A stretch of 23,407 nt of DNA from sequence record MH791404.1. One strand, given 5' to 3'. Both the position numbers and the translations under genes were made by a program. Below are positions 5,552-22,163 of the stretch, one piece after another (positions within the stretch are counted from its first letter, which is position 1; each line of letters starts with the position of its first letter). The notes beneath the pieces were generated by a model. That model was given only the letters and a program-made list of their open reading frames with translations. It was not told where the DNA came from and made no database searches.

Positions 5552-5581
5552 AGAATACCAGANTNTGNTTNGTNATGTCAA
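5552..5581 (-). promoter_or_regulatory. Sigma70-type early promoter
   Basis: TTGACA-18-TATTCT with TG extended -10. Ambiguous bases fall in or just outside the spacer and spare both hexamers. Confidence 0.6.
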
Positions 5582-6845: not shown

Positions 6846-7217
6846 TTATTCTACACTTTCTTCGTCTGGTGTCAATATGTTTTTAGAAATAAAATTTATT
6901 ACCCCATCATCTGGACGTTCAAACAACCAAATGCAATTTAGATATCCCAGTGAACTGGGATCTTCATGGTCAACACGACCCACTGGGATCTCACTGTCGT
7001 AACAAAACCCTTTGTAATCATCACATACATAGAAACCACACTGTTTACTGTAAACAATACCAACACAAACGCAAGATTCGGGCCAAAGTTCAACCAGACC
7101 ATCATTGTTTACAGTTACAGCAAATTTGTCATATTTGTGTTCGTTTACTGGGAGGTCGAGAACCAAATTATCAATTATAACAGGAATGTTAAAACTCTTA
7201 AAAGGTGGTGTATACAT
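6846..7217 (-). CDS. Hypothetical protein
   Basis: ORF track; candidate -10 TATACT at 7243-7248 upstream (the -35 falls in an N gap). Confidence 0.7.
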   Translation of the reverse strand: MYTPPFKSFNIPVIIDNLVLDLPVNEHKYDKFAVTVNNDGLVELWPESCVCVGIVYSKQCGFYVCDDYKGFCYDSEIPVGRVDHEDPSSLGYLNCIWLFERPDDGVINFISKNILTPDEESVE

Positions 7218-7281
7218 TTTAGTACCCTAAATATAAATGAGCAGTATAAGCGATNNNNNNNNNNNNNNNNNNNNNNNNGTT

Positions 7282-7554
7282 TTATTCGTCAACCATACAG
7301 TTAATCAAATGATCAATTCTACCAGCATCAAATTCTTTTATAATCTCTTTTTTCTGATATGGGGTTAGACTACTAACCATAACTCTGAAATTAAAAATCG
7401 TTAATGGTTTACCTCGCACGGTAGTAAACCCTAGTTCATTTAGAAAATCTACAAACCCAGATTGAGTATCTAGAATGTCATCACAGCCATATTTTGCCAA
7501 GATAGATGCGGTAGCTACAATATCTTTCATCAATTCAACTTTTGTAATTTTCAT
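7282..7554 (-). CDS. asiA: Anti-sigma70 protein AsiA
   Basis: 90 aa; IVATASILAKY..DDI......F..FLNELG......L....FR.MVS.LT...KK.II.EF aligns end to end with recalled T4 AsiA; syntenic downstream of 52. Confidence 0.88.
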   Translation of the reverse strand: MKITKVELMKDIVATASILAKYGCDDILDTQSGFVDFLNELGFTTVRGKPLTIFNFRVMVSSLTPYQKKEIIKEFDAGRIDHLINCMVDE

Positions 7555-7790
7555 ATTTTATAATCTTTGTCTCTTAGGATCACATCAGTTCGATTTCGAA
7601 CATCACCAATAAATCTTGCAGTACTACCACATGGAAAAATAATAATACTTACTTCATACCCAAACGCATCTTTTTGGATAGACAGTTTGACCGTTTCCAT
7701 TGAATGGTCTTTAAGGTTGATATGGGTAGGTTTTCCATCTTTTGTAAGACCAGACACTACCCCACCACCAAATAATGTCATATCAATCAT
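7551..7790 (-). CDS. Hypothetical protein
   Basis: ORF track; start moved to ATG 7790; ATGA overlap with asiA. Confidence 0.65.
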   Translation of the reverse strand: MIDMTLFGGGVVSGLTKDGKPTHINLKDHSMETVKLSIQKDAFGYEVSIIIFPCGSTARFIGDVRNRTDVILRDKDYKI

Positions 7791-7792
7791 AA

Positions 7793-7903
7793 TCACCAAC
7801 CTTCTGATTTCTTATGCTTTTTACCACGAATTTTCTTGGAATTCTCTTTCTTATCCTTCATAACAGAAGGACGATTGAAATTATGTTTAGCTACTGGATT
7901 CAT
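7793..7903 (-). CDS. 36-aa basic protein MNPVAKHNFNRPSVMKDKKENSKKIRGKKHKKSEGW (not in the ORF track)
   Basis: Hand translation; SD AAGGA; fills the gap between a promoter and the next ORF; NPVAKH.FN start recalled from small phage proteins. Confidence 0.75.
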   Translation of the reverse strand: MNPVAKHNFNRPSVMKDKKENSKKIRGKKHKKSEGW

Positions 7904-7927
7904 TTTCTATTCCTTATGTTATGAAAG

Positions 7928-7943
7928 AGGGGGCGAACCCCCT
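7928..7943 (-). promoter_or_regulatory. UUCG-tetraloop hairpin at the 5' end of the predicted transcript
   Basis: AGGGGG-TTCG-CCCCCT, starting about 10 nt downstream of the -10 at 7954-7959. Confidence 0.65.
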
Positions 7944-7953
7944 TGATGTGGTT

Positions 7954-7982
7954 ATAGTCTCATAACCAATACATGTTTGCAA
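7954..7982 (-). promoter_or_regulatory. Promoter, ATGA-GA class
   Basis: TTGCAA-17-GACTAT preceded by TATGA; lies in inverted repeat 7949-7968. Confidence 0.55.
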
Positions 7983-7987
7983 GTGGT

Positions 7988-8437
7988 TTATACTGGGAGA
8001 AGCCAGAAAAGACCACAGAAGAAGCCAGAAACAGCAGCAATGAGAGCCAAAAGAGCCACAACCGTGATTGCATTGATTCGTTTGTTGGTAGCCTCTCGTT
8101 CATCGTTGGTCATTGCTTCCCATTTCCGAATTGACTCTTCCAGATCTTTAACCCCATCAATACCACTCTCGATGTAGATCAGTGTCATTGGGTTAGCATA
8201 AGCTTTACCAAGATAGCCTACCCGTTCTTTAGCATAAGAGATCATGGTCAGATACTGGAACATCACCATCACGATAGCGCCAATGATAATAGGGCCATAC
8301 ATAGTGGATGCTGGGATTGATGCAAGGGCTGCTGCCATGAAGAACAGGCCCCACGTAACAATCGCATTTGACTTAACCCGTTGGGTTTCTTCATGAATAC
8401 GTTGTTTTACTTTTGTTACACGAGTTTCAATAGACAT
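7988..8437 (-). CDS. Membrane protein (about 3 TM), paralog of 8466-8894
   Basis: ORF track; hydrophobic segments; GKAYANPM motif. Confidence 0.75.
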   Translation of the reverse strand: MSIETRVTKVKQRIHEETQRVKSNAIVTWGLFFMAAALASIPASTMYGPIIIGAIVMVMFQYLTMISYAKERVGYLGKAYANPMTLIYIESGIDGVKDLEESIRKWEAMTNDEREATNKRINAITVVALLALIAAVSGFFCGLFWLLPV

Positions 8438-8465
8438 TTCATTTTCCTTTTTTACAAAACTATAT

Positions 8466-8894
8466 TTAGAGGAACAACCAAGATGATACCATTACAGGAA
8501 CACCAAATAAACCAAGATAAAATACAAAATCACAAAAGTATATTACTATTCCTGCAATAGTAATTCGTAGATTAAAGTTTGGTGTATTTTTATAAATATG
8601 AAGGTATTTCCCAACGTTATTATCGCAAAATGAGTATAGCATACACATAGATAATGGATGTTTAAACTCTTTGCCATAATTGGGGCGCTTAATCCATACA
8701 ACTACCATGAACACAATATCAAGGAGAACATAAAATATGGCACATAACAGTATGTATAGATTGACATCCGGCACAAACCCACAACCAACAAGTACACTTG
8801 CTACCAATGCCCCCATACATGATGGGATGAGCGCAGGCAACATCCCGTTTGTTTCTGTTTCTGCCTGTCTCATAATGTTTATTTCTATAGACAT
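8466..8894 (-). CDS. Membrane protein (about 3 TM), paralog of 7988-8437
   Basis: ORF track; hydrophobic segments; GKEFKHPL motif. Confidence 0.75.
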   Translation of the reverse strand: MSIEINIMRQAETETNGMLPALIPSCMGALVASVLVGCGFVPDVNLYILLCAIFYVLLDIVFMVVVWIKRPNYGKEFKHPLSMCMLYSFCDNNVGKYLHIYKNTPNFNLRITIAGIVIYFCDFVFYLGLFGVPVMVSSWLFL

Positions 8895-8895
8895 T

Positions 8896-10242
8896 TTATT
8901 TACTATCCTTCAATTTATTTTTCAAAGTTGTTAAATCTTTCAAATATTCTTTTTTTGAGTTTGTACTTTTCCAATAAGCTAGATCTTTTTCCGCTTGCTC
9001 ATATTCTTTAACCAGCTTTTCTACTTCATCTTCTGTCATGTTAAAGATTGGAAGACCAACCACCTTATCAGCATAAACCGAAAGCTCTGGGTCCAGAAGA
9101 GTTTTAACTTGTTGGATCATAGATTTCTTCGGTTGATTATAACCGATTTTCCCATCACGAGCCAGACGAATAAATTCTGCCTTCGCTTTCAATTCCGGGA
9201 TAAGAATAGTCAGATTTTCAATCATATTTTCAATGCGACGGTCAACGACAGTCATGCGATAATCGACAAATTCGCACACGAGTTGGCTTGTATTGTCGTA
9301 TTTTCGCAGATCCATATCCCCTGTAACCATGTTAGAGTTTGGACCGATTACGTTGATATTCTGATAGATATTCTCAGATAGAGAGAACTGTTTCATGATA
9401 TTTTCATGAGAAGTATCAAAATCACGTTTCAAAGTGACTCGGAATGTAAAATCACCGTCACCTTCAATCTCATCATAACTAACAATCTGGTCTTTTTCAA
9501 TAAGATTGTTCAAAATCGCTACATATTTAATTCGATTGAAACTAACTGGGATCTCTGTGATCAGAAGTTTGGTTTTACCTTGAAGTTCGTAAACCCCTTC
9601 GTTTGTCCATTGTTCACCTGATGTATTAACGTTCCCAATAAAAGAAGGGAACTTGATTTCTGGGTCTTTACATTTACCAGTCTTAACATAAGAAATACAT
9701 TCATCAATAACGCTGTGAATGTCATGTGGTAGTATATGAGTCGCGTAACCAGTTGCAACACCATGAACCCCATTGATTAGAACAAACGGAATGACTGGGA
9801 GATAAAATTTTGGAATAGAATAAGAATCAATCTCACTTGGTAAAACTAGATCCAAATCTTTAAACAGTAGGTCAAAATTATCATCCAGCTTACCGAAGAT
9901 GTAACGTGGTTCCGCTGCTGCTGGGTTCTGTCGTGAACCAAAGTTACCGCGACCCTTGATAACTGGGAAGTTGTTTGCGTATTCAGTTGCCATACCTGCA
10001 AGAACATCATACCCACTTGCTTCACCATGGGGATATCCATAGTCGGAGATAACACCACAAAGAAATGCGGATTTCTTGAAGTCCTTACTTGCGTTTTTGA
10101 TTGTGGAGTACAAAACAAAACGCTGAGATGGTTTGAACCCATCTACCATGGAAGGTAATGCCCGGTTGACGATGGTATAAAATGTATATTCTTTTGCTTC
10201 ATTATGAATATAACTTGAAATAGTACGATCTACGAATTTCAT
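8896..10242 (-). CDS. 52: DNA topoisomerase II medium subunit (gp52, GyrA/ParC-like)
   Basis: NRALPSMVDGFKPSQRF, YPHGE, GNFGSR, active-site AAAEPRY, LINGVHGVATGYAT; 448 aa. Confidence 0.97.
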   Translation of the reverse strand: MKFVDRTISSYIHNEAKEYTFYTIVNRALPSMVDGFKPSQRFVLYSTIKNASKDFKKSAFLCGVISDYGYPHGEASGYDVLAGMATEYANNFPVIKGRGNFGSRQNPAAAEPRYIFGKLDDNFDLLFKDLDLVLPSEIDSYSIPKFYLPVIPFVLINGVHGVATGYATHILPHDIHSVIDECISYVKTGKCKDPEIKFPSFIGNVNTSGEQWTNEGVYELQGKTKLLITEIPVSFNRIKYVAILNNLIEKDQIVSYDEIEGDGDFTFRVTLKRDFDTSHENIMKQFSLSENIYQNINVIGPNSNMVTGDMDLRKYDNTSQLVCEFVDYRMTVVDRRIENMIENLTILIPELKAKAEFIRLARDGKIGYNQPKKSMIQQVKTLLDPELSVYADKVVGLPIFNMTEDEVEKLVKEYEQAEKDLAYWKSTNSKKEYLKDLTTLKNKLKDSK

Positions 10243-10271
10243 ATCATTCCTTATTTTAATTTATTTTATGT

Positions 10272-10301
10272 ATCATACCACATATGAATATAAACTGTAA
10301 A
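10272..10301 (-). promoter_or_regulatory. T4-early-like promoter for 52
   Basis: TTTACA-18-TATGAT with GTGG immediately before the -10. Confidence 0.65.
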
Positions 10302-10322
10302 GCCCATCAAAAGACGGGCTTT
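10299..10322 (-). terminator. Terminator-like hairpin after ndd
   Basis: AAAGCCCGTC-TTTT-GATGGGCTTT immediately after the ndd stop; overlaps the -35 of the gene 52 promoter. Confidence 0.65.
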
Positions 10323-10325
10323 GTT

Positions 10326-10730
10326 CTAACTTACCATTCGACCATGGATGATAAATTTGTTTCGGATCTTGCCAGTCAACTCATGACCATTATTCATCTG
10401 TCCGTATTCTTCAATCCCAAGGAGGTGTCGGGCTTGGCTATATTTAAGGAAATATAGTTTTACGGTTTTTCCTGTCATCAGATAATCATGAACATCTTTA
10501 GCCTGTCCGGTACGTGGTTTTCGAAGTCGGATCATGGTTTCACCAAAACCACGTTTTCGCTGTTGATTTCCAACATGAGTCATATAAACAACAGAACTAG
10601 CGGGGGCAGAAATGAAGTAAAACCCCTCTTTCGTTACATCACCAGTTTCGTTAAGGTTGATACCATCAAAGTTACCAACAACAACCGCACCAGACTTGAC
10701 AAGCTCCTTTGTAGTTAAATTCTTTTTCAT
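10326..10730 (-). CDS. ndd: Nucleoid disruption protein Ndd
   Basis: T.KEL...GA.VVG, K.GFYF, VGNQ..K.GF match recalled T4 Ndd; syntenic upstream of 52. Confidence 0.82.
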   Translation of the reverse strand: MKKNLTTKELVKSGAVVVGNFDGINLNETGDVTKEGFYFISAPASSVVYMTHVGNQQRKRGFGETMIRLRKPRTGQAKDVHDYLMTGKTVKLYFLKYSQARHLLGIEEYGQMNNGHELTGKIRNKFIIHGRMVS

Positions 10731-10733
10731 ATC

Positions 10734-10944
10734 NNNNNNNNNNNNNNNNNNNNNNNNNNNNNNNNNNNNNNNNNNNNNNNNNNNNNNNNNNNNNNNNNNN
10801 NNNNNNNNNNNNNNNNNNNNNNNNNNNNNNNNNNNNNNNNNNNNNNNNNNNNNNNNNNNNNNNNNNNNNNNNNNNNNNNNNNNNNNNNNNNNNNNNNNNN
10901 NNNNNNNNNNNNNNNNNNNNNNNNNNNNNNNNNNNNGTTTTCAT
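10734..10944 (-). CDS. Probable small ORF, almost entirely inside an N gap
   Basis: ATG AAA at 10944 overlapping the upstream stop; the body is unreadable and the end is unknown. Confidence 0.35.
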
Positions 10945-11135
10945 TATTTCACCATATTAAAAATTAAAAACAAGACAATACCAAGACCCAATATTTTAAT
11001 AAACCAACCGGTGGGAGTGGTCATCATTGATTCCGGGTGATACATTTCTTCTGGTATATCTCTTTTATTGCCATAACGGTCGTGAGTATCCATCAGCCTA
11101 GGGCCTTCATCCTCATCGTATGGTTGATATCTCAT
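10944..11135 (-). CDS. Small protein with a C-terminal TM helix
   Basis: ORF track; ATGA overlap; same neighbourhood as T4's small ndd.x ORFs. Confidence 0.7.
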   Translation of the reverse strand: MRYQPYDEDEGPRLMDTHDRYGNKRDIPEEMYHPESMMTTPTGWFIKILGLGIVLFLIFNMVK

Positions 11136-11380
11136 TCACCCACCCGAAAAAATTTTCCGTCTCGAACCAGTACATGATCCAAATTATAAATGATGAACCC
11201 TTTGGTTTCATATGGGGTAACAACACGATATTCGACGTCTTTGGTATCGTGATTCACATGAAAGGAATATACCCAGTCTTTAACCTTTAATTGAAGGCTT
11301 GTATAACCAGACACAAACGGTATTACTTCCTTATAGCCTTCACTTTTCTTAATGTTTACGAAACTCTCTATAGAAACCAT
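11132..11380 (-). CDS. Hypothetical protein
   Basis: ORF track; SD GAGG. Confidence 0.7.
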   Translation of the reverse strand: MVSIESFVNIKKSEGYKEVIPFVSGYTSLQLKVKDWVYSFHVNHDTKDVEYRVVTPYETKGFIIYNLDHVLVRDGKFFRVGE

Positions 11381-11399
11381 GATTAAACCTCGTGTATGG

Positions 11400-11468
11400 T
11401 GTCTAGAATCAATTCCTATGGAGAATACAATAACATTGTATGAGATAACGAGGAATTGATTCTAGACA
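11400..11468. repeat. Perfect 18-bp inverted repeat enclosing a 7-bp inverted repeat
   Basis: TGTCTAGAATCAATTCCT (11400-11417) / AGGAATTGATTCTAGACA (11451-11468); inner ATACAAT-AAC-ATTGTAT (11425-11441). Confidence 0.9.
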
Positions 11469-11519
11469 GATTGGTGAGCTTTAGCGAACCGGCTACGCCG
11501 TACTCGTTTCACTCGTTCT

Positions 11520-11563
11520 AATTATAGATCTTCTATATAAATACTTATAGGAAATCTATAATT
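11520..11563. repeat. AT-rich 18-bp imperfect inverted repeat with TATAAATA at the loop
   Basis: AATTATAGATCTTCTATA-TAAATACT-TATAGGAAATCTATAATT, two imperfect pairs. Confidence 0.85.
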
Positions 11564-11578
11564 TGATTTCATATGATA

Positions 11579-11989
11579 CTAGCCCAGTACCTTTTTGACA
11601 AGGGCACCATCAAACAAAAGACCTTTGGCAGAAGCTGCTTTCTTACAAGCGCCCATGACCTGACCGATGTTAGAACCACCAACGAGCTGACTAAGTACCT
11701 CTTTGATATGTTCTTCACCAAACACCTTCGGAAGATAGGAANNNNNNNNNNNNNNNNNNNNNNNNNNNNNNNNNNNNNNNNNNNNNNNNNNNNNNNNNNN
11801 NNNNNNNNNNNNNNNNNNNNNNNNNNNAACCGATTGGACTTGTTCGTCAGTTACTACCTGATTACCGGAAGGACTTGCTTCACCAATTAGGGTTGTTAGA
11901 GCGTTGATACGAACTTTCCCGTGATGGGTAGAACGGTCTTCTGATTTACGGGCTTTAATTTGGTCTTTCTTAATTTGTTCAAGCAGCAT
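11579..11989 (-). CDS. GatB/YqeY domain protein
   Basis: LLEQIKKDQIKARK...LTTLIGE...VTDEQV...YLPK...NIGQVM, typical YqeY layout; middle masked by Ns but in frame. Confidence 0.8.
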   Translation of the reverse strand: MLLEQIKKDQIKARKSEDRSTHHGKVRINALTTLIGEASPSGNQVVTDEQVQSVXXXXXXXXXXXXXXXXXXXXXXXXXXXXXSYLPKVFGEEHIKEVLSQLVGGSNIGQVMGACKKAASAKGLLFDGALVKKVLG

Positions 11990-12236
11990 TTAATACACCT
12001 TTCATATATTGGATAGTTGATTTGAGGATTTCTAGATCTTCTTTGCAAGAGTTGTTTTCAACCCAAGCAATAAACGCCATAACTTCCTGAGCTTCCATAA
12101 CGTTTAGAGATTTCTTATGCATCATACGATTATAAACCGCATTGATAGAATATTGGGAAGGGGATTCATTACAAACCCACTCTTGATAACACGGGTAAAG
12201 TTCATAAAACTCATGCATNTTCAGACNAATAATCAT
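11979..12236 (-). CDS. Hypothetical protein
   Basis: ORF track; follows a promoter and SD GAGGG. Confidence 0.7.
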   Translation of the reverse strand: MIIXLXMHEFYELYPCYQEWVCNESPSQYSINAVYNRMMHKKSLNVMEAQEVMAFIAWVENNSCKEDLEILKSTIQYMKGVLNAA

Positions 12237-12264
12237 GGTAAATCCCTCTTTGTTTTATAGTTGA

Positions 12265-12293
12265 ATTTTAAACTGGCCTTTTGTTTATGTCAA
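12265..12293 (-). promoter_or_regulatory. Sigma70-type early promoter
   Basis: TTGACA-17-TAAAAT. Confidence 0.75.
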
Positions 12294-12297
12294 CGGT

Positions 12298-12681
12298 TTA
12301 TCGGATAGAAATAAAACCGTATACACCAGAAGAAGAACCAAAGGACATTGCAGCCTTCCAGTTGTCGATGTGTCCACGGACATACTTAGAAGCACCTTTC
12401 CATCCATTTCCTTTGTGAATATCACCGGTTTCCATGTTTACAAACCAAACCATCGAACCGGTAGTTTCCTCTCGTCCGTAATCGTGCATCATGATACGAG
12501 CGAATTTTCGGCCTGTTTGATATGAGTAAGAACGGCGGTTGAGATTTGCAGAGATAAAAGATTCTACATGTTCTTCGCTGTAGCGAGCCCGCATTTCAGG
12601 AAGGACGCGATTGAACCAGTTATCTTCTGANAAGGCNNTCATTTCAGCAACCATNNNTTCGATTTNNTTCANCATAGTCAT
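12298..12681 (-). CDS. Conserved phage hypothetical protein (GRKF.RI...FV..ETGDI.K...WK...K.VRG.I family)
   Basis: ORF track; recalled widespread phage motif; SD AGGAG. Confidence 0.75.
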   Translation of the reverse strand: MTMXXXIEXMVAEMXAXSEDNWFNRVLPEMRARYSEEHVESFISANLNRRSYSYQTGRKFARIMMHDYGREETTGSMVWFVNMETGDIHKGNGWKGASKYVRGHIDNWKAAMSFGSSSGVYGFISIR

Positions 12682-12713
12682 TCTCCTAATTGGTGTCTCG
12701 TCTCAACAGGGAT

Positions 12714-12742
12714 AGTATCTCATAACGTGATTATTCGATCAA
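12714..12742 (-). promoter_or_regulatory. Promoter, ATGA-GA class
   Basis: TTGATC-17-GATACT preceded by TATGA. Confidence 0.6.
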
Positions 12743-13042
12743 GTACTTTTCTACAAAAGTTTTAGCCAATTTTAGTTCAGAAACGATTACATCAAAGTAC
12801 GCTTGTCGTACATCCACATCTTGAACATTAAAAAATTCGTTTTCTGTTGCGATCTGGTACTTATTGAAAACTTCACTTGCCCGTACTAAAGCCTGAAAAG
12901 CAAATGTATGGTGTTCGAAATAAGGGCCGCCATTCAAAGAGAAAATCGTCACACCAATACAATCATTAGTACCTTTGAACCGAGATTCGTTTTCGAAAAT
13001 ATCGATTGCACTATTGATATCATCAATGATTTTCTTTTTCAT
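12731..13042 (-). CDS. Hypothetical protein
   Basis: ORF track; start moved to ATG 13042 (SD GAGG, just after the upstream stop). Confidence 0.7.
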   Translation of the reverse strand: MKKKIIDDINSAIDIFENESRFKGTNDCIGVTIFSLNGGPYFEHHTFAFQALVRASEVFNKYQIATENEFFNVQDVDVRQAYFDVIVSELKLAKTFVEKYLIE

Positions 13043-13043
13043 A

Positions 13044-13271
13044 TCAGACCTCGTAATCCAGAACATCTTGAAAGTCAAAGGATTCAACACCACCACCAGT
13101 CACTTTGTCATAGTAGCAATGTACATCACCCTCAAAATCTTCATCGTAATAGCTTTCATACACCATTTCGACACCAGATTCAAGAACAACAACGATCTTG
13201 TCCTCAAATTGAGTCAGATCAATATGCTTGAAACCTTTAACATCATGCAGAGCAAGCAATACGTTATCCAT
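13044..13271 (-). CDS. Small acidic hypothetical protein
   Basis: ORF track; SD AAGGAG; follows a promoter. Confidence 0.7.
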   Translation of the reverse strand: MDNVLLALHDVKGFKHIDLTQFEDKIVVVLESGVEMVYESYYDEDFEGDVHCYYDKVTGGGVESFDFQDVLDYEV

Positions 13272-13307
13272 CTTAATCTCCTTTGGGAACCATTTCCCGA
13301 CACAGTT

Positions 13308-13336
13308 AGTATCTCATAGGCCGGAATACCGATCAA
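13308..13336 (-). promoter_or_regulatory. Promoter, ATGA-GA class
   Basis: TTGATC-17-GATACT preceded by TATGA; both hexamers identical to 12714-12742. Confidence 0.6.
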
Positions 13337-13348
13337 CAACTTTTTAAA

Positions 13349-13666
13349 TTATTTTCCGAGGTTGATGTAAGCAGCCCGAAGATTGGCAACAACCAGATCC
13401 ATATAGATACTGAACTCTTCAGTAATCTCTCCGTCATGAGCCGCACATACATCGTGACAGTTNNNNNNNNNNNNNNNNNNNNNNNNNNNNNNNNNNNNNN
13501 NNNNNNNNNNNNNNNNNNNNNNNNNNNNNNNNNNNNNNNNNNNNNNNNNNNNNNNNAAAGTGAAGTTGGAGCTAATACCAGTAACAACCTTGGCATTTAC
13601 CATTACCAGTTCGGACTGAATACCCATAATGAGTTCGCGGAGTTGTTGCATAGTGATATGAGTCAT
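13349..13666 (-). CDS. Hypothetical protein (partly masked)
   Basis: ORF track; SD GAGGA; in frame across Ns. Confidence 0.65.
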   Translation of the reverse strand: MTHITMQQLRELIMGIQSELVMVNAKVVTGISSNFTXXXXXXXXXXXXXXXXXXXXXXXXXXXXXXXXNCHDVCAAHDGEITEEFSIYMDLVVANLRAAYINLGK

Positions 13667-13678
13667 AGTGTTATCCTC

Positions 13679-13906
13679 TTATTTAACGATGGTGAAACCA
13701 GATTGTACCAGACTTTCAACTTGACTAGAACCAACGCGACCAACGGTGTTCATTGAAAAGTCTGGACTGTGAGTGATCCCCTGAGATTCGAGATAATTTA
13801 ACACGGTGATATATGCAAGTTTCAAGCTTACTGCTTCCACTAAGAAATCTTTCATATTGGTAGAACCCAGAACCTTGATAGACACAGCGTAATTGAACTT
13901 TTTCAT
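13679..13906 (-). CDS. Hypothetical protein
   Basis: ORF track; SD AAGGAG; follows a promoter and 5' hairpin. Confidence 0.7.
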   Translation of the reverse strand: MKKFNYAVSIKVLGSTNMKDFLVEAVSLKLAYITVLNYLESQGITHSPDFSMNTVGRVGSSQVESLVQSGFTIVK

Positions 13907-13949
13907 TTCTCTCTCCTTAAGGGGAACACTCCCCGTTTCGACAAGACCT

Positions 13950-13977
13950 ATATTATCAGAATACGACTGGATGTCAA
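13950..13977 (-). promoter_or_regulatory. Sigma70-type promoter followed by hairpin GGGGA-GTGT-TCCCC (13921-13934)
   Basis: TTGACA-16-TAATAT with TG extended -10. Confidence 0.6.
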
Positions 13978-14180
13978 CGCTCTAATTGCGATTGTTTGCA
14001 AATATTTTTATATCGTACTTCTAAGCAATCTAACCAGTGACGATGAACAGGGTCCGGATTCTTTTCCAGATGTTCTGTCAACATATCGATCATTAGCTGG
14101 AAATTATCAATCAGATATGCTTGATCGTCAAATTCCAGTGGGATGAATGTAACCCCTTGATTCCACGAATATTGTTTCAT
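13974..14180 (-). CDS. Hypothetical protein
   Basis: ORF track; ATGA overlap. Confidence 0.65.
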   Translation of the reverse strand: MKQYSWNQGVTFIPLEFDDQAYLIDNFQLMIDMLTEHLEKNPDPVHRHWLDCLEVRYKNICKQSQLER

Positions 14181-14734
14181 ACAAATACATCTTCCATAGT
14201 GAAATTGATGGAACCTAATGCTTCTTTGAGGATATCAACTGTTTTGTATACTGTTGGGATGGTCTGACAATCCTCCAAACCCCGATGACGATACAGGTGA
14301 TGGCGAATCATCATATCAATGACGCTACTGGTAATCGTCTTGATATCACTTGGGTATTTGCTACCGATATACCGTTTGTATTCCTTGATGAACCATTCCT
14401 GAGAACGGAATTTAGTTCGTTTAAGGAATTCGGTTGGAATCGTGATACTCATCTCTGAGGTAATCCATACCTTGGTATATTCGCGACCTAAAATATATTC
14501 TTTTTCTTCGCGAACAAACGCTTTATAAACGGTATCTCCAATAAAAGAGTTAGGTTCAAATTCCCAACGAGAGATAACACCATCGTTGTTTATCTCGATT
14601 GTACCTGCTTTGTGATCGACAACACAATCATCCGGATTGTACCTAACTGCGTCTTTGAATTCACCACTTTCGCCTATCCAAACCGTCCATTGACTCATGA
14701 ACGTGCTGTAGTGACAGTAACCAATCTTCATCAT
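14177..14734 (-). CDS. Hypothetical protein
   Basis: ORF track; TAATG overlap. Confidence 0.75.
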   Translation of the reverse strand: MMKIGYCHYSTFMSQWTVWIGESGEFKDAVRYNPDDCVVDHKAGTIEINNDGVISRWEFEPNSFIGDTVYKAFVREEKEYILGREYTKVWITSEMSITIPTEFLKRTKFRSQEWFIKEYKRYIGSKYPSDIKTITSSVIDMMIRHHLYRHRGLEDCQTIPTVYKTVDILKEALGSINFTMEDVFV

Positions 14735-15114
14735 TAACCCTCGATTTTGAACTCGTTATAACCAACAAGAGAGATTTTACGTTCTTTCTTATGGTATACC
14801 AGTTGTCGGATAACATCAACCTCTTTAACGTGATTTCGAATATAGTTGTCGAGATCCATCATGGAATCGGCAGAAATTCGAACCCCATTTACAACTCGGT
14901 ATAACGGCATCGATACGGTATCAAATACATTAACACACAAGGTACGAGCTTCCTGCCAAGATAGGTTAATCATAACCTTCTGTTGTTTAATAATCCCATC
15001 GTAGTAACCAGTCCAACCTTTTCCGTTGTTTGGGCGATAACCAATCAACCACATAAGGTTATCCATGTGTTCCATTACTACTTTAGCATTAGGCCATTTA
15101 TCGAAATTTTTCAT
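14734..15114 (-). CDS. Hypothetical protein
   Basis: ORF track; start moved to ATG 15114 (ATGA overlap). Confidence 0.7.
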   Translation of the reverse strand: MKNFDKWPNAKVVMEHMDNLMWLIGYRPNNGKGWTGYYDGIIKQQKVMINLSWQEARTLCVNVFDTVSMPLYRVVNGVRISADSMMDLDNYIRNHVKEVDVIRQLVYHKKERKISLVGYNEFKIEG

Positions 15115-15524
15115 TTTACTTGTACCCATTCGTTGTTTTCATGATAAATAGAGTCGGATTCTCGGAAGAATACCGGAAGGTCATTGAATTCTTGAACGAG
15201 ATTTTCTGCAATCATCTTCATAATCTCGATACCTTCTTGGTTGTGACCAATAGAGATATAAACCTTATCTCCCTCATAAACAAAACCGTCGATTTCTTCT
15301 TTCTGTGAAACAGTACACATAAACATACTTCGCTTTCCGCTTTCCGCGTTAAAGACAATTGAAAAGCTTTGAAAGTCGTAAGAGTGGATTGTTGCAAATC
15401 CACCAACGCCACTGGTATTCTTCGCATGAATTCGCTGTGTAAGATTATGAACAACGTGGCCGATAGTGGTGATGTTCATGTTATGGTTGCTGATGTCAAC
15501 AAAAATAGAAGTACATACGCTCAT
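15111..15524 (-). CDS. Hypothetical protein
   Basis: ORF track; start moved to ATG 15524 (SD AAGGA); follows a promoter. Confidence 0.7.
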   Translation of the reverse strand: MSVCTSIFVDISNHNMNITTIGHVVHNLTQRIHAKNTSGVGGFATIHSYDFQSFSIVFNAESGKRSMFMCTVSQKEEIDGFVYEGDKVYISIGHNQEGIEIMKMIAENLVQEFNDLPVFFRESDSIYHENNEWVQVK

Positions 15525-15563
15525 AATCAATTTCCTTTAAGTGTGTTTTGTTTCAACAAAGAG

Positions 15564-15592
15564 AGGATACCTTTATTAGTATCCTCTGTCAA
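15564..15592 (-). promoter_or_regulatory. Sigma70-type promoter inside a 9-bp inverted repeat
   Basis: TTGACA-17-TATCCT; AGAGGATAC-N8-GTATCCTCT at 15562-15587. Confidence 0.7.
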
Positions 15593-15597
15593 CAAGT

Positions 15598-16032
15598 TTA
15601 ATCAACAAATTTCAGGGAAGGGCAGAATTTTTCTTTCTTCGCTTTCAGGAAAGATATAATCAACGATTCTTTGTATTCCCCATTTGCTTTTTCTTCGAGT
15701 TTCTTAGCGTCTCGCTGCCATTTCTTTCGGCGCATAGAACTCTTCATATGGTCACAAAGGAAGAAAAACCCAACTATAATCACAATCGCAATCACAGCAA
15801 ATACAAAACCAATCAAAGGAGAAGTTATCAAAACGAGACCACTGGTGATACCAAATGCTTTTAGAATCGACAGTCCAATCCCAGTTAGGGCAAAAATAAA
15901 CAGGGTTGACATACCGGATATCAGAACCAATGCCCAAACAGTTTTCCAAAAATATGGACACAAACTAGTTGGGATTGTATCAAACATTTTGTTGTTCAGA
16001 CGATAGTGCCAGCTTGATTTATTAATATTCAT
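15598..16032 (-). CDS. Membrane protein (2 TM) with a basic C-terminus
   Basis: ORF track; two long hydrophobic stretches; SD AAGGA. Confidence 0.75.
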   Translation of the reverse strand: MNINKSSWHYRLNNKMFDTIPTSLCPYFWKTVWALVLISGMSTLFIFALTGIGLSILKAFGITSGLVLITSPLIGFVFAVIAIVIIVGFFFLCDHMKSSMRRKKWQRDAKKLEEKANGEYKESLIISFLKAKKEKFCPSLKFVD

Positions 16033-16034
16033 TT

Positions 16035-16418
16035 TTATTCCTTTTCAATTTTCCAGTTGATGATGAGATTATCTAATGTACTCACCTTTTTATCACTACG
16101 ATTATAACCTATATGTTCATAGAAGTCCCACACACTATCAAAATAAATTTCTTGATTTTTGTAATAGTCTGTTTCCCCTATGGCTTTATTCATCCGTTCA
16201 TTGCTACCGTGGTCGCTCGTATCATATCGACCAAACACACCCTTGTCAATGACTCCCATATGTTTATCATACCATCTGTTTAGGATCCGACCAACAAACC
16301 CCTCAATGGAGGTGAGTTGACGATACCAACCACCTTTTGGATGCCCATCATAAATCCGGATACGATATAGCTGTGTGATCGGGTGTTCATAAAATTTATA
16401 AGTATAAACCTTATCCAT
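16035..16418 (-). CDS. Hypothetical protein
   Basis: ORF track. Confidence 0.7.
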   Translation of the reverse strand: MDKVYTYKFYEHPITQLYRIRIYDGHPKGGWYRQLTSIEGFVGRILNRWYDKHMGVIDKGVFGRYDTSDHGSNERMNKAIGETDYYKNQEIYFDSVWDFYEHIGYNRSDKKVSTLDNLIINWKIEKE

Positions 16419-16767
16419 TACTGAGTTCCTTTAGGATACNNNNNNNNNNNNNNNNNNNNNNNNNNNNNNNNNNNNNNNNNNNNNNNNNNNNNNNNNNNNN
16501 NNNNNNNNNNNNNNNNNNNNNNNNNNNNNNNNNNNNNNNNNNNNNNNNNNNNNNNNNNNNNNNNNNNNNNNNNNNNNNNNNNNNNNNNNNNNNNNNNNNN
16601 NNNNNNNNNNNNNNNNNNNNNNNNNNGGAAATATAAACTCGATCCCCAGAAACTTTGGTTACAAGACGAGGTTTTGACGCAACAACACCACCAACATTAA
16701 TGGATTCGGTTAAAACCCATTTATCAACTAGATGTGCATGTACTTCTACTTTTTCTTTCTTACTCAT
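16411..16767 (-). CDS. Hypothetical protein (about half masked)
   Basis: ORF track; in frame across the N gap, but could be two genes. Confidence 0.5.
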   Translation of the reverse strand: MSKKEKVEVHAHLVDKWVLTESINVGGVVASKPRLVTKVSGDRVYISXXXXXXXXXXXXXXXXXXXXXXXXXXXXXXXXXXXXXXXXXXXXXXXXXXXXXXXXXXXXXXXILKELSNG

Positions 16768-17080
16768 TTATCACCTCAAACTTGTCTGTGTTCATCTCTT
16801 CGAGATGACCCCATTCACTAGTACCCAACGAGATGATTTTCCCTTCTTCTGTGACAATCACGTAATCACGAGCACAAATATCCAAACAATCACCATCTAC
16901 TGTTGGTGGATTATAAGCCTCTTGACCATCAAACGGGATCTGTTTCAGAACATAAACCCATTTGATGTTAGGAAACAACCCTTTCAGGTTAGCCAATGCA
17001 TGTTCACACTTAACATACTTATATGAATCTACATGCCAACTTTCACCATAAAACTCGTTTACACTATCAAAATCAATCAT
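16760..17080 (-). CDS. Hypothetical protein
   Basis: ORF track; SD AAGGTG. Confidence 0.7.
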   Translation of the reverse strand: MIDFDSVNEFYGESWHVDSYKYVKCEHALANLKGLFPNIKWVYVLKQIPFDGQEAYNPPTVDGDCLDICARDYVIVTEEGKIISLGTSEWGHLEEMNTDKFEVINE

Positions 17081-17088
17081 AAATCACC

Positions 17089-17331
17089 TTAAAATTGGAT
17101 ACTTGGGGAAACCATATAACTTTCGATATCCATATGTGGGAAGTACGTGATTGTCAAGGTATCAACCCCTTTAACCATTCGATCCTCGACTGGGACAAGA
17201 CGGTTAATCTCCTTCCGGATCTCCTTGAGGTCATCTTTAACACTATGAGTTTTCCCACGAACCTTTTTTCCAGAAAGGCTGATCGTGGTTTTCCCAAGTA
17301 CATTACTATAATACGAAGTGATATAAACCAT
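17089..17331 (-). CDS. Hypothetical protein
   Basis: ORF track, but its TTG start at 17385 is the -35 of a promoter; ATG 17331 has SD GGAG. Confidence 0.65.
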   Translation of the reverse strand: MVYITSYYSNVLGKTTISLSGKKVRGKTHSVKDDLKEIRKEINRLVPVEDRMVKGVDTLTITYFPHMDIESYMVSPSIQF

Positions 17332-17356
17332 ACTTTTCTCCATTCGGTGTATTGAT

Positions 17357-17385
17357 ATGGTCTCATCCAATACACCTTTTGTCAA
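17357..17385 (-). promoter_or_regulatory. Promoter, ATGA-GA class, with the -10 in a hairpin loop
   Basis: TTGACA-17-GACCAT preceded by GATGA; flanked by GGTGTATTG/CAATACACC (17346-17376). Confidence 0.65.
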
Positions 17386-17588: not shown

Positions 17589-17867
17589 TTACCCCTGATA
17601 ATTCTTTTCAAGTACATCAATGATATGAGAAACCATAGCTTTGTTCTTATCCTTTTCCCAACTAAAGTGTCTGATATCCATAGAGAAAAGACTTTTTGGG
17701 AGAGAAAATTTGCGCATTAAAAATCCATCACCGCGACTCGTGGGGTCATCAACAAAGAAATCATATTCATCTTCCCATACACGAATTTCTTTCAGATATT
17801 TCTTGACAAATTGAGAAACTGTAATATCAATTGTTTTTGTTGTTACTACTTGGTATGTATGTTTCAT
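17589..17867 (-). CDS. Hypothetical protein
   Basis: ORF track; start moved to ATG 17867 (TGATG overlap with the methyltransferase stop). Confidence 0.7.
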   Translation of the reverse strand: MKHTYQVVTTKTIDITVSQFVKKYLKEIRVWEDEYDFFVDDPTSRGDGFLMRKFSLPKSLFSMDIRHFSWEKDKNKAMVSHIIDVLEKNYQG

Positions 17868-18583
17868 CAGTAAAATTCCGCAGTTGCTATTTCGACCATG
17901 GGACTTACACCATGCCACTCAGAAAGATAAATCGAAGTGTCTACACCACATCCCGGTTCAAGACGGATACCGGTTTGTTCGGTGAACTTCAAATACTTAT
18001 TTGACGGTTCTTTATCACAGAAAGAACGTACCCCACTATATTTAAATCCGGAACTCATCTGGGGGATAATAAAGACTCCGAATTCGGATACCTTGCTAGC
18101 GGCCTCTATTACCTTATATTCGAATTCTGCGCCAGTATACCGACCTTTATAACCAGATGTATTGATGTTTCCAAAAGGTGGATTGCTAATACAAAAATCA
18201 AACCGGTCAATAGTGTTATCGCAGTATTCCAGTGCATCACCACGGATCCAGTTTGCATTAGGTACGACTCGTTTACCAACCTCAAAATATTCGTGGTTCA
18301 ACTCAACACAAGTAACATCGTTGTCGTACAACCAGAAAGACAAACCACCAATACCAGCACATAGATCCAATACAGAACGGTCTGGGTTAACTTCGATCAT
18401 AGCATCACGAGCTAACATAACTGGGGTGAAAAATGCACCAGCAAGGCCATTCATCTGGGTTGCACCCTCTTGATAATTCTCAAGGATAAAACGACGTTCG
18501 TCCCATGAAAGTTCCTTATCAGAGTGAACAAGATCCATTGCCTTATTATGGAGTTTCAACGCCTGTTTGCTGATCTTAGCCAT
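17867..18583 (-). CDS. SAM-dependent amino (N6-adenine or N4-cytosine) DNA methyltransferase, gamma order
   Basis: GAFFTP (motif X), VLDLCAGIGGL (motif I), VELN, GDAL, ISNPPFG (motif IV). Confidence 0.85.
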   Translation of the reverse strand: MAKISKQALKLHNKAMDLVHSDKELSWDERRFILENYQEGATQMNGLAGAFFTPVMLARDAMIEVNPDRSVLDLCAGIGGLSFWLYDNDVTCVELNHEYFEVGKRVVPNANWIRGDALEYCDNTIDRFDFCISNPPFGNINTSGYKGRYTGAEFEYKVIEAASKVSEFGVFIIPQMSSGFKYSGVRSFCDKEPSNKYLKFTEQTGIRLEPGCGVDTSIYLSEWHGVSPMVEIATAEFY

Positions 18584-20560: not shown

Positions 20561-20595
20561 AAGCCCATTCTATATGAATGGGCTTATAAATGCAA
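20561..20595 (-). promoter_or_regulatory. Sigma70-type promoter overlapping a 10-bp terminator-like hairpin
   Basis: TTGCAT-17-TAGAAT; minus strand AAGCCCATTC-ATATA-GAATGGGCTT then TGTT. Confidence 0.65.
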
Positions 20596-21982: not shown

Positions 21983-22163
21983 TAGCTATTTCATCACAAT
22001 GTCGATAAACATATGATTTTCTTCCGACGAATACGCGATAGCTTCCGCCAATAGTTANNNNNNNNNNNNNNNNNNNNNNNNNNNNNACGCCATATCGAAG
22101 AAGGTTTCTATCAACAAGTTCTTTTTTGATGATGTTAACGAAATCTACTGAGACAATCTTCAT
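21972..22163 (-). CDS. Small hypothetical protein (partly masked)
   Basis: ORF track; start moved to ATG 22163 (SD AAGGA). Confidence 0.55.
   Translation of the reverse strand: MKIVSVDFVNIIKKELVDRNLLRYGXXXXXXXXXXXTIGGSYRVFVGRKSYVYRHCDEIAIAF

What the first reader, a model, noticed from the sequence alone, without database searches (positions are those of the whole stretch)
7954..17385. Recurring non-canonical promoter class: TTG-type -35, 17 bp, ATGA then a -10 starting with G
Seen at four intergenic sites with exact 17-bp spacing: TTGCAA..TATGA-GACTAT (7954-7982), TTGATC..TATGA-GATACT (12714-12742 and 13308-13336), TTGACA..GATGA-GACCAT (17357-17385). Each precedes an SD and ORF, and TAGTATCTCATA is repeated exactly at 12713 and 13307. 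Known: sigma70 strongly prefers T at -12; TGn extended -10 promoters resist AsiA. Inference: a distinct temporal class, possibly a MotA-independent middle mode read by AsiA-bound or otherwise modified polymerase, or ATGAGA is a binding site for a phage factor. This is one of the best candidates for an undescribed system here.
Basis: partly seen in the sequence, partly recalled or inferred. Interest (0 to 1): 0.7.

Follow-up and report, generated by a model that had tools for sequence, protein, structure and literature searches.

The report
Phage early promoters, extended −10 type
The four sites are real, but they are ordinary members of this T4-like Aeromonas phage's main set of early promoters for the host's sigma-70 RNA polymerase, with the same −10 box (GATACT-like) as the classic strong promoters T7 A1 and lambda PL; this is not an undescribed system.

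Summary
The window is the last 23.4 kb of Aeromonas phage Assk (Ceceduovirus, T4-like). All genes run on the minus strand.

TTG-N16-ATGAGA occurs four times, only on the gene strand and only between genes (0.35 expected).

It is not a rare or special class. In the N-free near-twin AS-yj, 19 of 47 high-confidence early promoters have G at −12. In phage 65, from another genus, 12 of 20 do. Their consensus is A-tract, G, TTGACa, 17 bp, T-R-T-G-R, GATA(A/C)T.

"ATGA" is the known trTGn extended −10 element. GATACT is the −10 of T7 A1. G-at-−12 promoters almost always carry TG (18/19, against 10/25 for T-at−12) and a 17-bp spacer. This fits TG compensating for a weaker −12 contact.

About half are fused to a stem-loop. 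This is the promoter-early stem-loop (PeSL) cassette described for RB49/phi1. G- and T-type promoters are interleaved along the same early region and share upstream features.

The phage has AsiA and no detectable MotA, as published for Aeh1 and phage 65. No transcript data could be obtained, so timing and AsiA sensitivity remain untested.

Verdict: real promoters of a known kind, of low to moderate interest.

The parts
7954..7982 (-). Site 1 promoter: -35 TTGCAA (7977-7982), 17-bp spacer ending TATGA (trTGn, 7960-7964), -10 GACTAT (7954-7959). Predicted start near 7947.
   Evidence: Identical in five relatives. The phage 65 ortholog keeps TTGCAT-17-...ATGA-GAGAAT although its spacer has diverged.
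7949..7968 (-). Stem-loop over the -10 of site 1 (TGGTTATG/TATAACCA, loop AGAC). A-16 pairs with T-7 and T-15 with A-8.
   Evidence: z -3.0 for the 52-nt segment that holds both hairpins.
7928..7943 (-). Second stem-loop just downstream of site 1, GGGGG-TTCG-CCCCC followed by TCTTTC, about +4 to +20 of the predicted transcript.
   Evidence: Phage 65 has a different sequence with the same structure at this place, GTGGGGAGAAATCCCCAC.
7793..7903 (-). 36-aa ORF served by site 1. Not annotated in Assk.
   Evidence: Annotated as gp025 in CC2 and also in AS-yj.
12714..12742 (-). Site 2 promoter: -35 TTGATC (12737-12742), spacer ending TATGA (12720-12724), -10 GATACT (12714-12719). No hairpin over the -10.
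   Evidence: (z +1.4). The phage 65 ortholog is TTTACA-17-...ATGA-GATACT with an unrelated spacer.
12298..12681 (-). ORF served by site 2. It contains scattered Ns and is not annotated in Assk. Relatives annotate the start at the second ATG, 12675.
13308..13336 (-). Site 3 promoter: -35 TTGATC (13331-13336), spacer ending TATGA (13314-13318), -10 GATACT (13308-13313). Serves the CDS 13044-13271.
   Evidence: CC2 has TTGACC-17-...TATGA-GACACT, keeping G-12, A-11 and T-7. Metagenome contigs switch sequence exactly at 13316 and 13285.
17357..17385 (-). Site 4 promoter: -35 TTGACA (17380-17385), spacer ending GATGA (17363-17367), -10 GACCAT (17357-17362; GAACAT in AS-yj and CC2). Serves the CDS 17089-17331.
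17346..17376 (-). Stem-loop that spans the spacer, the -10 and the start region of site 4.
   Evidence: -14.7 kcal/mol, z -4.5, 0 of 200 shuffles as stable.
5552..5581 (-). Sister early promoter with T at -12: TTGACA-18-TGG-TATTCT.
10272..10301 (-). Sister early promoter with T at -12 upstream of the topoisomerase gene 52: TTTACA-18-TGG-TATGAT.
13950..13977 (-). Sister early promoter with T at -12: TTGACA-16-TGA-TAATAT.
15564..15592 (-). Sister early promoter with T at -12, TTGACA-17-TATCCT, inside a terminator-like stem-loop followed by a T-run.
   Evidence: (z -4.7).
20567..20595 (-). Sister early promoter with T at -12, TTGCAT-17-TAGAAT, inside a terminator-like stem-loop.
   Evidence: (z -4.7).
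12265..12293 (-). Sister early promoter with T at -12 and no TG: TTGACA-17-TAAAAT.
7282..7554 (-). asiA, the anti-sigma-70 gene.
   Evidence: annotation; 1184 phage records match by tblastn. T4 AsiA against AS-yj gives E 5e-14, while T4 MotA gives a best E of 4.6.

Best explanation
The four sites are early promoters of the phage, read by unmodified host sigma-70 holoenzyme right after infection. They belong to the phage's largest and most uniform promoter family: an A-rich tract, then G, TTGACa at -35, a 17-bp spacer ending in T-R-T-G-R (the extended -10 element), and a -10 hexamer G-A-T-A-(A/C)-T. Region 4 of sigma reads the -35, region 3 reads the TG, and region 2 reads A-11 and T-7. The near-obligatory TG and the optimal spacer make up for the weaker contact at a G:C pair at -12 (inferred). 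About half of these promoters, including sites 1 and 4, are fused to a stem-loop whose loop or 3' arm contains the -10. This gives a compact promoter plus stem-loop cassette of the PeSL type. Such a cassette insulates each small early gene from upstream transcription, and because the cassettes resemble each other they recombine and spread. That explains the exact 12-mer shared by sites 2 and 3. What is shown: the sequence pattern, its abundance, its position, its conservation and the hairpins. What is inferred: promoter activity, start sites and timing.
For: (1) Position and excess: 4 hits against 0.35 expected, all on the coding strand, all intergenic, 26-50 nt before an SD and ATG. (2) Family size: the AS-yj whole-genome catalogue has 47 high-confidence early-strand promoters, with -12 = T 25, G 19, A 2, C 1. 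G among the non-T promoters has p = 1.2e-6 against background, even though my score favoured T. Phage 65 has 12 G, 7 T and 1 A in 50 kb. In the window, 4 of 11 intergenic promoter candidates scoring 8 or more have G at -12. (3) The elements are the canonical ones. In the G class, -17 is T in 15/19, -16 is R in 16/19, -15 is T in 18/19, -14 is G in 19/19, and A-11 and T-7 are 19/19 by selection; the spacer is 17 bp in 18/19. TG is present in 18/19 of the G class against 10/25 of the T class (Fisher p = 1.6e-4). (4) Both classes have the same upstream half (A-tract, G-36, TTGAC) and are interleaved along the genome. (5) Conservation: the sites are identical or keep G-12, A-11 and T-7 in CC2, P19, AS-zj, AS-szw and AS-yj. 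In phage 65 the orthologs of sites 1 and 2 keep a -35, 17 bp, ATGA and GA...T although the spacer sequence is replaced. (6) A G-class promoter drives the annotated 'inhibitor of host transcription' gene in AS-yj, at 187703. (7) Literature: trTGn consensus and AsiA immunity of TGn/-10 promoters (PMC2613000); T4 early promoters as UP/-35/TGn/-10, like T7 PA1 and lambda PL (PMC2988021); T7 A1 = TTGACT...GATACT (PMC10800924); -12 T not rigidly conserved in Aeh1 early promoters, which have G at -33 (PMC1524935); PeSL cassettes with the stem-loop between -35 and -10 or over the -10 (PMC2839356). (8) Hairpins: sites 1 and 4 have z -3.0 and -4.5, and T-class promoters at 15592 and 20595 have z -4.7. 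Stem sequences differ between sites while the geometry is the same.
Against: There are no transcription data. The only public runs that hold related sequence are low-depth metagenome contigs without strand or 5'-end information. Sites 2 and 3 have a weak -35 (TTGATC) and no hairpin over the -10. My promoter catalogue is a hand-made pattern and context filter, not a trained model, so the class counts are approximate. G at -12 is far more common here than in E. coli promoters (own knowledge: roughly one in ten), and I have not explained why. Compensation by TG is an inference from a correlation.
Confidence: 0.8

Rival explanations
1. One reading: the G-at-12/TGn promoters are a separate temporal class. 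They would be a MotA-independent delayed or middle mode that keeps firing, or is preferred, once AsiA has blocked -35 recognition. T-at-12 promoters without TG would be shut off.
For: The phage has AsiA and no detectable MotA, as published for Aeh1 and phage 65 (PMC2988021, PMC1524935). There is no excess of Mot-box promoters. TG is nearly obligatory in the G class and present in only 40% of the T class. TGn/-10 promoters are immune to AsiA in vitro (PMC2613000).
Against: G-class promoters also carry excellent -35 boxes, G-36 and A-tracts, and match the T4 early consensus upstream better than the T class does. The two classes are interleaved, with no separate blocks. One G-class promoter drives an Alc-like host shut-off gene, which is an early function. 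In T4, AsiA is not needed for early shut-off and early promoters resist it as a group (PMC2988021). No timing data exist.
Confidence: 0.12
2. ATGAGA (or TATGAGATA) is the binding site of a phage- or host-encoded DNA-binding protein that overlaps the -10.
For: The core is conserved between genera at sites 1 and 2 while the spacers diverge. The 12-mer is identical at sites 2 and 3.
Against: Every conserved base coincides with a known RNA polymerase contact: T-15, G-14, A-11 and T-7. The positions that polymerase does not read vary across the family (-13 A/G/T, -16 A/G/T/C, -10 to -8 variable). The inverted repeats around the core have different sequences at different sites, so no common operator exists. 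Outside promoters the motif is not enriched: ATGAGAYNNT gives 6 hits against 2.8 expected, and four of the six are the sites themselves.
Confidence: 0.04
3. The recurrence mainly reflects common descent and gene conversion among mobile promoter plus stem-loop cassettes (PeSL-like), not selection on each base. The primary role of the stem-loops would be termination or attenuation, and supplying homology for modular gene shuffling.
For: Sub-families share long identical stretches: 21 nt between AS-yj 187703 and 107070, about 30 nt between 179944 and 119186, and the GGTATC...GATACTCTTTTTGTCGAAAC group. Metagenome contigs join a different -35 and spacer, and a different downstream gene, to the site-3 core exactly at 13316 and 13285. 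The gene served by site 3 is absent from its place in phage 65, and its homolog sits elsewhere. PeSL biology is shown experimentally in RB49/phi1 (PMC2839356).
Against: Descent alone does not explain why only A-11, T-7, TG and the 17-bp distance stay fixed while everything else drifts, including in cross-genus orthologs. The hairpins of the ATGAGA subgroup are not followed by a T-run, so they are poor intrinsic terminators. This rival complements the best explanation and does not replace it.
Confidence: 0.4

Closest known systems
T4-type early promoters (UP/-35/TGn/-10), including the predicted early promoters of Aeromonas phage Aeh1 (Nolan et al. 2006, PMC1524935; Hinton 2010, PMC2988021)
   Same: An A-rich tract at about -46 to -40, G at -36, a -35 box with G at -33 (GTTGAC) as reported for Aeh1, RB49 and RB43, a TG extended -10, invariant A-11 and T-7, and a location in front of small early ORFs. 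Nolan et al. already state that T at -12 is not rigidly conserved in Aeh1.
   Different: In T4 itself -12 is T. Here G is used in about 40% of early promoters (Ceceduovirus) to 60% (phage 65), with its own tight consensus TRTGR-GATAMT. The literature I could read does not spell this out for these genera.
T7 A1 and lambda PL/PR promoters
   Same: T7 A1 is TTGACT...GATACT (PMC10800924). Lambda PL is TTGACA-17-GATACT and PR has GATAAT (own knowledge; GATACT and GATAAT are used as strong -10 boxes in PMC2132448). These are the same hexamers with G at -12, in very strong phage early promoters read by plain sigma-70 holoenzyme.
   Different: As far as I recall, those promoters do not depend on a TG extended -10. 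Here TG accompanies G-12 in 18 of 19 cases.
PeSL (promoter-early stem-loop) cassettes of coliphages RB49 and phi1 (Arbiol et al. 2010, PMC2839356)
   Same: An intergenic cassette made of stop codon, AT-rich tract, strong sigma-70 promoter, a stem-loop placed between -35 and -10 or over the -10, then SD and ATG. The cassettes are concentrated in hyperplastic regions full of ORFans, and there are signs of exchange between cassettes. PeSL-like sequences were noted in Aeh1.
   Different: The stems here are not mainly GGGG...CCCC. Sites 2 and 3 lack a stem over the -10. Terminator activity and mini-circle formation were not tested for this phage.
E. coli extended -10 (TGn/-10 and -35/TGn) promoters
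   Same: The -17 trTGn -13 motif directly upstream of the hexamer (PMC2613000).
   Different: Classical extended -10 promoters have poor -35 boxes. These have both a good -35 and TGn.

Membership tests
Sigma-70 -35/-10 promoter | -35 hexamer resembling TTGACA, with TTG | tested here: met
   TTGCAA, TTGATC, TTGATC and TTGACA. The family consensus is TTGAC.
Sigma-70 -35/-10 promoter | Spacer of 16-18 bp, optimum 17 | tested here: met
   17 bp at all four sites and in 18/19 of the G class.
Sigma-70 -35/-10 promoter | -10 hexamer with A at -11 and T at -7; T at -12 preferred | tested here: met
   A-11 and T-7 are present at all four sites. -12 is G, as in T7 A1 GATACT (PMC10800924). -12 is a preference, not an absolute requirement.
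Sigma-70 -35/-10 promoter | Primary transcript 5' end 6-8 nt downstream, made by sigma-70 holoenzyme | not testable with these tools
   Only unstranded low-depth contigs were available.
Extended -10 (trTGn) promoter | T at -15 and G at -14, weaker T at -17 and R at -16 | tested here: met
   TATGA at sites 1-3 and GATGA at site 4. In the family, T-17 15/19, R-16 16/19, T-15 18/19, G-14 19/19.
T4-type early promoter | A-rich UP-like tract at -40 to -46 and G at -36 | tested here: met
   Site 2 AGAAAAGTAC, site 3 TTAAAAAGTTG, site 4 ATAAGTAG, and site 1 weaker (TATAAACCAC). In the G class, G-36 is 15/19 and the A fraction at -45 to -40 is 0.53-0.79.
T4-type early promoter | Active immediately after infection without phage protein synthesis | not testable with these tools
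   No time-course data.
PeSL cassette (RB49/phi1) | Strong early promoter plus a stable stem-loop within or next to it, in an intergenic gap between an upstream stop codon and a downstream SD/ATG | tested here: met
   Met for sites 1 and 4 (z -3.0 and -4.5). Site 3 has only a downstream 5'-UTR hairpin and site 2 has none, so it is met for 2 of 4 sites, and for about 11 of 19 in the AS-yj G class.
PeSL cassette (RB49/phi1) | The stem-loop terminates or attenuates upstream transcription | not tested
   The hairpins of the ATGAGA subgroup lack a following T-run. The GATACTC-TTTTTG subgroup and several T-class hairpins have one.
PeSL cassette (RB49/phi1) | Cassettes mediate insertion, deletion or exchange of the flanked ORFans | tested here: inconclusive
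   Mosaic junctions at 13316 and 13285 in metagenome contigs. The site-3 gene is relocated in phage 65. This is suggestive only.
T4 MotA-dependent middle promoter | Mot box (TGCTTtA) centred at -30 in place of the -35 box | tested here: not met
   No TGCTT at any of the four sites. There are 0 Mot-box-type matches in the window and no strand excess in AS-yj.
T4 MotA-dependent middle promoter | motA gene in the genome | tested here: not met
   T4 MotA by tblastn against the whole AS-yj genome gives a best E of 4.6, while AsiA gives E 5e-14.
T4 late promoter | TATAAATA at -13 to -6 | tested here: not met
   There is no TATAAATA on the minus strand of the window.
Known structured RNA (Rfam) | Match to a curated covariance model | tested here: not met
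   0 matches at gathering score in the whole window.

The most novel reading that the evidence does not exclude
In the AsiA-positive, MotA-negative Aeromonas phages of the Emmerichvirinae, promoter architecture alone may encode timing. The uniform -35/TRTGR/G-12 class (40-60% of early promoters) would stay active on AsiA-bound polymerase through its TG and UP contacts. The TG-less T-12 promoters and host promoters would be silenced. This would give a MotA-independent early-to-delayed switch and a role for the 'orphan' AsiA.
Probability: 0.12. Interest if true: 0.5.

Novelty: new member of a known kind. Interest (0 to 1): 0.22.

Why it matters
The result gives a usable early-promoter model for Ceceduovirus and Ishigurovirus phages: AAAAAGtaG-TTGACa-N12-TRTGR-GATAMT, plus a looser T-at-12 set. 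Their records carry no regulatory annotation, so the model helps define transcription units among hundreds of ORFans. It also shows that the promoter plus stem-loop cassette organisation described in coliphages RB49/phi1 extends to Aeromonas phages. The unusually high use of G at -12, tightly coupled to TG and a 17-bp spacer, is a clean natural data set on compensation between the -12 contact and the extended -10 element. It also offers a simple experimental handle on what AsiA does in phages without MotA. It does not reveal a new regulatory system.

Tried and rejected
(1) My first pattern had the wrong spacer length and found nothing. It was corrected.

(2) RNA evidence. The look-up of sequencing runs returned only 'RNA?' runs kept as contigs.

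(3) An IMG/VR scan for TTGAC-N15-TGAGATACT gave at least 119 loci, almost all with a single match in unrelated contigs. By my rough estimate from the pattern's 14 specified bases (collection size assumed, not checked), that is about what chance would give, so it says nothing about distribution.

(4) The 48-kb Aeh1 piece I fetched held only 5 predicted promoters, one with G at -12, which is too few to count. The 13-kb T4 piece gave none under my context filter, so I have no T4 control for the catalogue.

(5) Alternative registers for the -10 were examined. TATGAG, GAGAYT and TACTNT at 19-20 bp fit only some sites. Only GAYNNT at 17 bp fits all of them.

(6) I considered a GNRA-tetraloop reading of GAGA and dropped it, because the closing pairs do not fit.

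(7) A recurring TTGTYGAAAC motif in the initial transcribed region was found downstream of only 7 of the 47 AS-yj early promoters, so I did not pursue it.

(8) Rfam found nothing.

Full report
Identity of the window. Megablast places the window at 208433-231839 of Aeromonas phage Assk (MH791404.1, 'UNVERIFIED'), a T4-like myovirus of the genus Ceceduovirus (Straboviridae, Emmerichvirinae). All annotated genes run on the minus strand. They include asiA (7282-7554), the gene 52 topoisomerase subunit, ndd and about 45 small hypothetical genes, which is a typical T4-type early, 'hyperplastic' region.

Assembly gaps. For each N-run I located both flanks in five relatives. In CC2 the flanks are separated by exactly the length of the N-run in every case: 203, 86, 94, 187, 24 and 29. 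In the much closer relatives AS-yj, AS-zj, P19 and AS-szw the distances often differ (-11, 155, 43-197, -143). The Assk record therefore looks scaffolded on CC2, with N wherever reads did not fit. Continuity and reading frame across the gaps should not be trusted. For example, the 203-N gap probably hides a deletion of a CC2 gene. None of the four sites is affected, and all are read identically or almost so in N-free relatives.

Check of the observation. TTG-N16-ATGAGA occurs four times, all on the minus strand, against 0.35 expected. The 12-mer TAGTATCTCATA occurs exactly twice. All four sites lie in intergenic gaps, 26-50 nt upstream of an SD and start codon. Two of the downstream ORFs (7793-7903 and 12298-12681) are missing from the Assk annotation but are annotated in CC2 and AS-yj.

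How large the family is. I fetched the whole genome of AS-yj (230 kb, no N, 96% identical to the window overall and 99.9% over window 7000-10700). I catalogued promoter-like sites that had a -35 with TTG and at least 4 of 6 matches, a 16-18 bp spacer, NANNNT, an upstream ORF end, and a downstream SD/ATG/ORF. Of 47 high-confidence sites on the early strand, -12 is T in 25, G in 19, A in 2 and C in 1. G among the non-T sites has p = 1.2e-6 against the background of pattern hits, although my score gave a bonus only to T.

The G class is uniform. T-17 is present in 15/19, R-16 in 16/19, T-15 in 18/19, G-14 in 19/19, R-13 in 18/19, then G-A-T-A-(A/C)-T, and the spacer is 17 bp in 18/19. In the T class, TG at -15/-14 occurs in 10/25 and spacers are 16, 17 or 18 bp (8, 13 and 4). 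The differences are significant: Fisher p = 1.6e-4 for TG and 2.5e-3 for the spacer. Both classes share an A-rich tract at about -46 to -40 and TTGAC. G at -36 is present in 15/19 of the G class and 12/25 of the T class. The two classes are interleaved along the early region.

In the window itself, 4 of 11 intergenic promoter candidates scoring 8 or more are of the G type. In phage 65, which belongs to another genus (Ishigurovirus), a 50-kb early region holds 12 G-type, 7 T-type and 1 A-type promoters, mostly TG(A/G)-GATACT.

What the elements are. 'ATGA' followed by G is A-16, T-15, G-14, A-13 and G-12. That is the extended -10 element in its longer form -17 trTGn -13, a recognised weak consensus of sigma-70 promoters (PMC2613000). 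GATACT is the -10 hexamer of the T7 A1 promoter, whose -35 is TTGACT (PMC10800924). From my own knowledge it is also the -10 hexamer of lambda PL, and GATAAT is that of lambda PR; both hexamers serve as strong -10 boxes in synthetic promoters (PMC2132448). Hinton's review describes T4 early promoters as 'uber' UP/-35/TGn/-10 promoters similar to T7 PA1 and lambda PL (PMC2988021). [quoted passage not shown] Every part of the motif is thus a known contact of unmodified sigma-70 holoenzyme. The tight coupling of G-12 with TG and a 17-bp spacer is what one expects if TG compensates for a weaker -12 contact. That last step is inference.

Conservation. Within Ceceduovirus the four sites are almost invariant. 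In CC2, site 3 has changed to TTGACC-17-...TATGA-GACACT and keeps G-12, A-11 and T-7. Phage 65 is more telling. The ortholog of site 1 reads TTGCAT-17-...ATGA-GAGAAT and that of site 2 reads TTTACA-17-...ATGA-GATACT. Both have unrelated spacer sequences but the same geometry, and site 2 has an A-tract plus G in front of the -35. What stays fixed is what RNA polymerase reads. The hairpin downstream of site 1 is kept in structure with a different sequence (GGGGGTTCGCCCCC against GTGGGGAGAAATCCCCAC).

Stem-loops and cassettes. Sites 1 and 4 sit in significant hairpins (z -3.0 and -4.5). Sites 2 and 3 have none over the -10. In the ATGAGA subgroup of AS-yj the hairpins share one centre, about -11.5, so that A-16 pairs with T-7 and T-15 with A-8. 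This helps explain the A before TG at those sites. Stem sequences differ from site to site (GGGGTAT/ATACCCC, GGGGCTA/TAGCCCC, TGGTTAT/ATAACCA, GGTGTATTG/CAATACACC), which argues for a structural role and against a common protein operator. T-class promoters (15592, 20595) are also embedded in hairpins, and there a T-run follows, making them terminator-like.

This is the organisation published as PeSL, promoter-early stem-loop, in RB49 and phi1. There the stem-loop most often lies between -35 and -10 or over the -10, acts as a terminator or attenuator, and supplies homology for shuffling of ORFan cassettes. PeSL-like sequences were noted in Aeh1 (PMC2839356). Signs of such exchange here are as follows. 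Sub-families share 21-30 identical bases. Metagenome contigs attach another -35 and spacer (TTGACT CTGAAAGCGTGTTT), and another downstream gene, to the site-3 core exactly at 13316 and 13285. The gene served by site 3 is absent from that place in phage 65, while a homolog lies next to the homolog of the site-4 gene. The identical 12-mer at sites 2 and 3 is best read in this light.

AS-yj has AsiA (E 5e-14 to T4 AsiA) and no detectable MotA (best E 4.6), and no Mot-box promoter signal. This agrees with what is published for Aeh1 and phage 65 (PMC1524935, PMC2988021). TGn/-10 promoters are immune to AsiA in vitro, and T4 early promoters resist AsiA because they carry several recognition elements (PMC2613000, PMC2988021). 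It is therefore reasonable that these promoters tolerate AsiA. That is the published behaviour of T4-type early promoters as a group, not evidence for a new class.

Against a separate temporal class: the G-type promoters have the best early-type upstream halves, they are interleaved with T-type promoters, and one drives the annotated host-transcription inhibitor gene of AS-yj. Against a factor-binding site: the positions that polymerase does not read vary. I could obtain no transcript 5' ends, so timing and AsiA sensitivity remain open. I give the temporal-class reading about 0.12.

Verdict. They are new, unannotated members of a known kind: T4-type UP/-35/trTGn/-10 early promoters, partly in PeSL-type cassettes. 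The one feature worth a short note is the high frequency of G at -12 (40-60%) and its near-absolute coupling to TG and a 17-bp spacer in the Emmerichvirinae. This refines the 2006 remark on Aeh1 and gives a simple test bed for AsiA function without MotA. Interest is about 0.2.

Noticed in passing
window 10734-10936, 11742-11827, 13463-13556, 16440-16626, 7255-7278, 22058-22086: Every N-run has exactly the length of the corresponding stretch of phage CC2, while the closest relatives (AS-yj, AS-zj, P19, AS-szw) often have different lengths there (-11, 155, 43-197, -143). The Assk record looks reference-scaffolded on CC2, so gene content at the gaps is unreliable (for example the CC2 gp391 equivalent at 10731-10943).
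   Followed up: yes
window 7793-7903, 11979-12236, 12298-12681 (minus strand): ORFs that are annotated in CC2 and AS-yj but missing from the Assk annotation. The last one contains scattered Ns.
   Followed up: partly
window 13285 and 13316: Contigs from two public runs (X1, X5) match only 13285-13316 (the -10, start region and 5'-UTR hairpin of site 3). On either side they continue into a different -35 and spacer (TTGACT CTGAAAGCGTGTTT, like AS-yj promoter 119186) and a different downstream gene. This suggests mosaic exchange between promoter cassettes.
   Followed up: partly
window 12737-12742 and 13331-13336; gene 17867-18583: The -35 hexamer TTGATC of sites 2 and 3 (and of AS-yj 184695) contains GATC. 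The phage encodes a DNA methyltransferase (RefSeq annotation of the CC2 and AS-zj orthologs). Methylation-sensitive -35 recognition is conceivable.
   Followed up: no
window 11400-11468 and 11517-11566: A perfect 18-nt inverted repeat with 33 nt between the arms (TGTCTAGAATCAATTCCT / AGGAATTGATTCTAGACA), and a second 21-nt imperfect one, lie in the 198-nt gap upstream of gene 11132-11380. The loop of the first contains GTTATCTCATAC, the reverse complement of a TATGAGATAAC-like core.
   Followed up: no
window 7928-7943; L014 (phage 65) about 8000-8030: The hairpin just downstream of site 1 is conserved in structure between genera with a different sequence (GGGGGTTCGCCCCC against GTGGGGAGAAATCCCCAC). 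It would sit at the 5' end of the predicted transcript, as a possible stabiliser or attenuator.
   Followed up: partly
L014 (phage 65) 19406-19773, minus strand: Upstream of the homolog of the site-3 gene, phage 65 has TTGACC-17-...ATATGA-GCCTAT. It has the same geometry and a hairpin (GATAT/ATATC), but C instead of A at -11. It may be a decayed promoter that keeps its stem-loop.
   Followed up: no
AS-yj (L005, L006) 148613, 111980, 175338; phage 65 (L014), several: In a sub-family of cassettes the 5' arm of the stem is the complement of the -10 hexamer itself (GAGTATC...GATACTC), followed by TTTTTGTCGAAAC. The -10 box therefore doubles as the 3' half of a terminator-like stem, and the T-run doubles as the start region.
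   Followed up: partly
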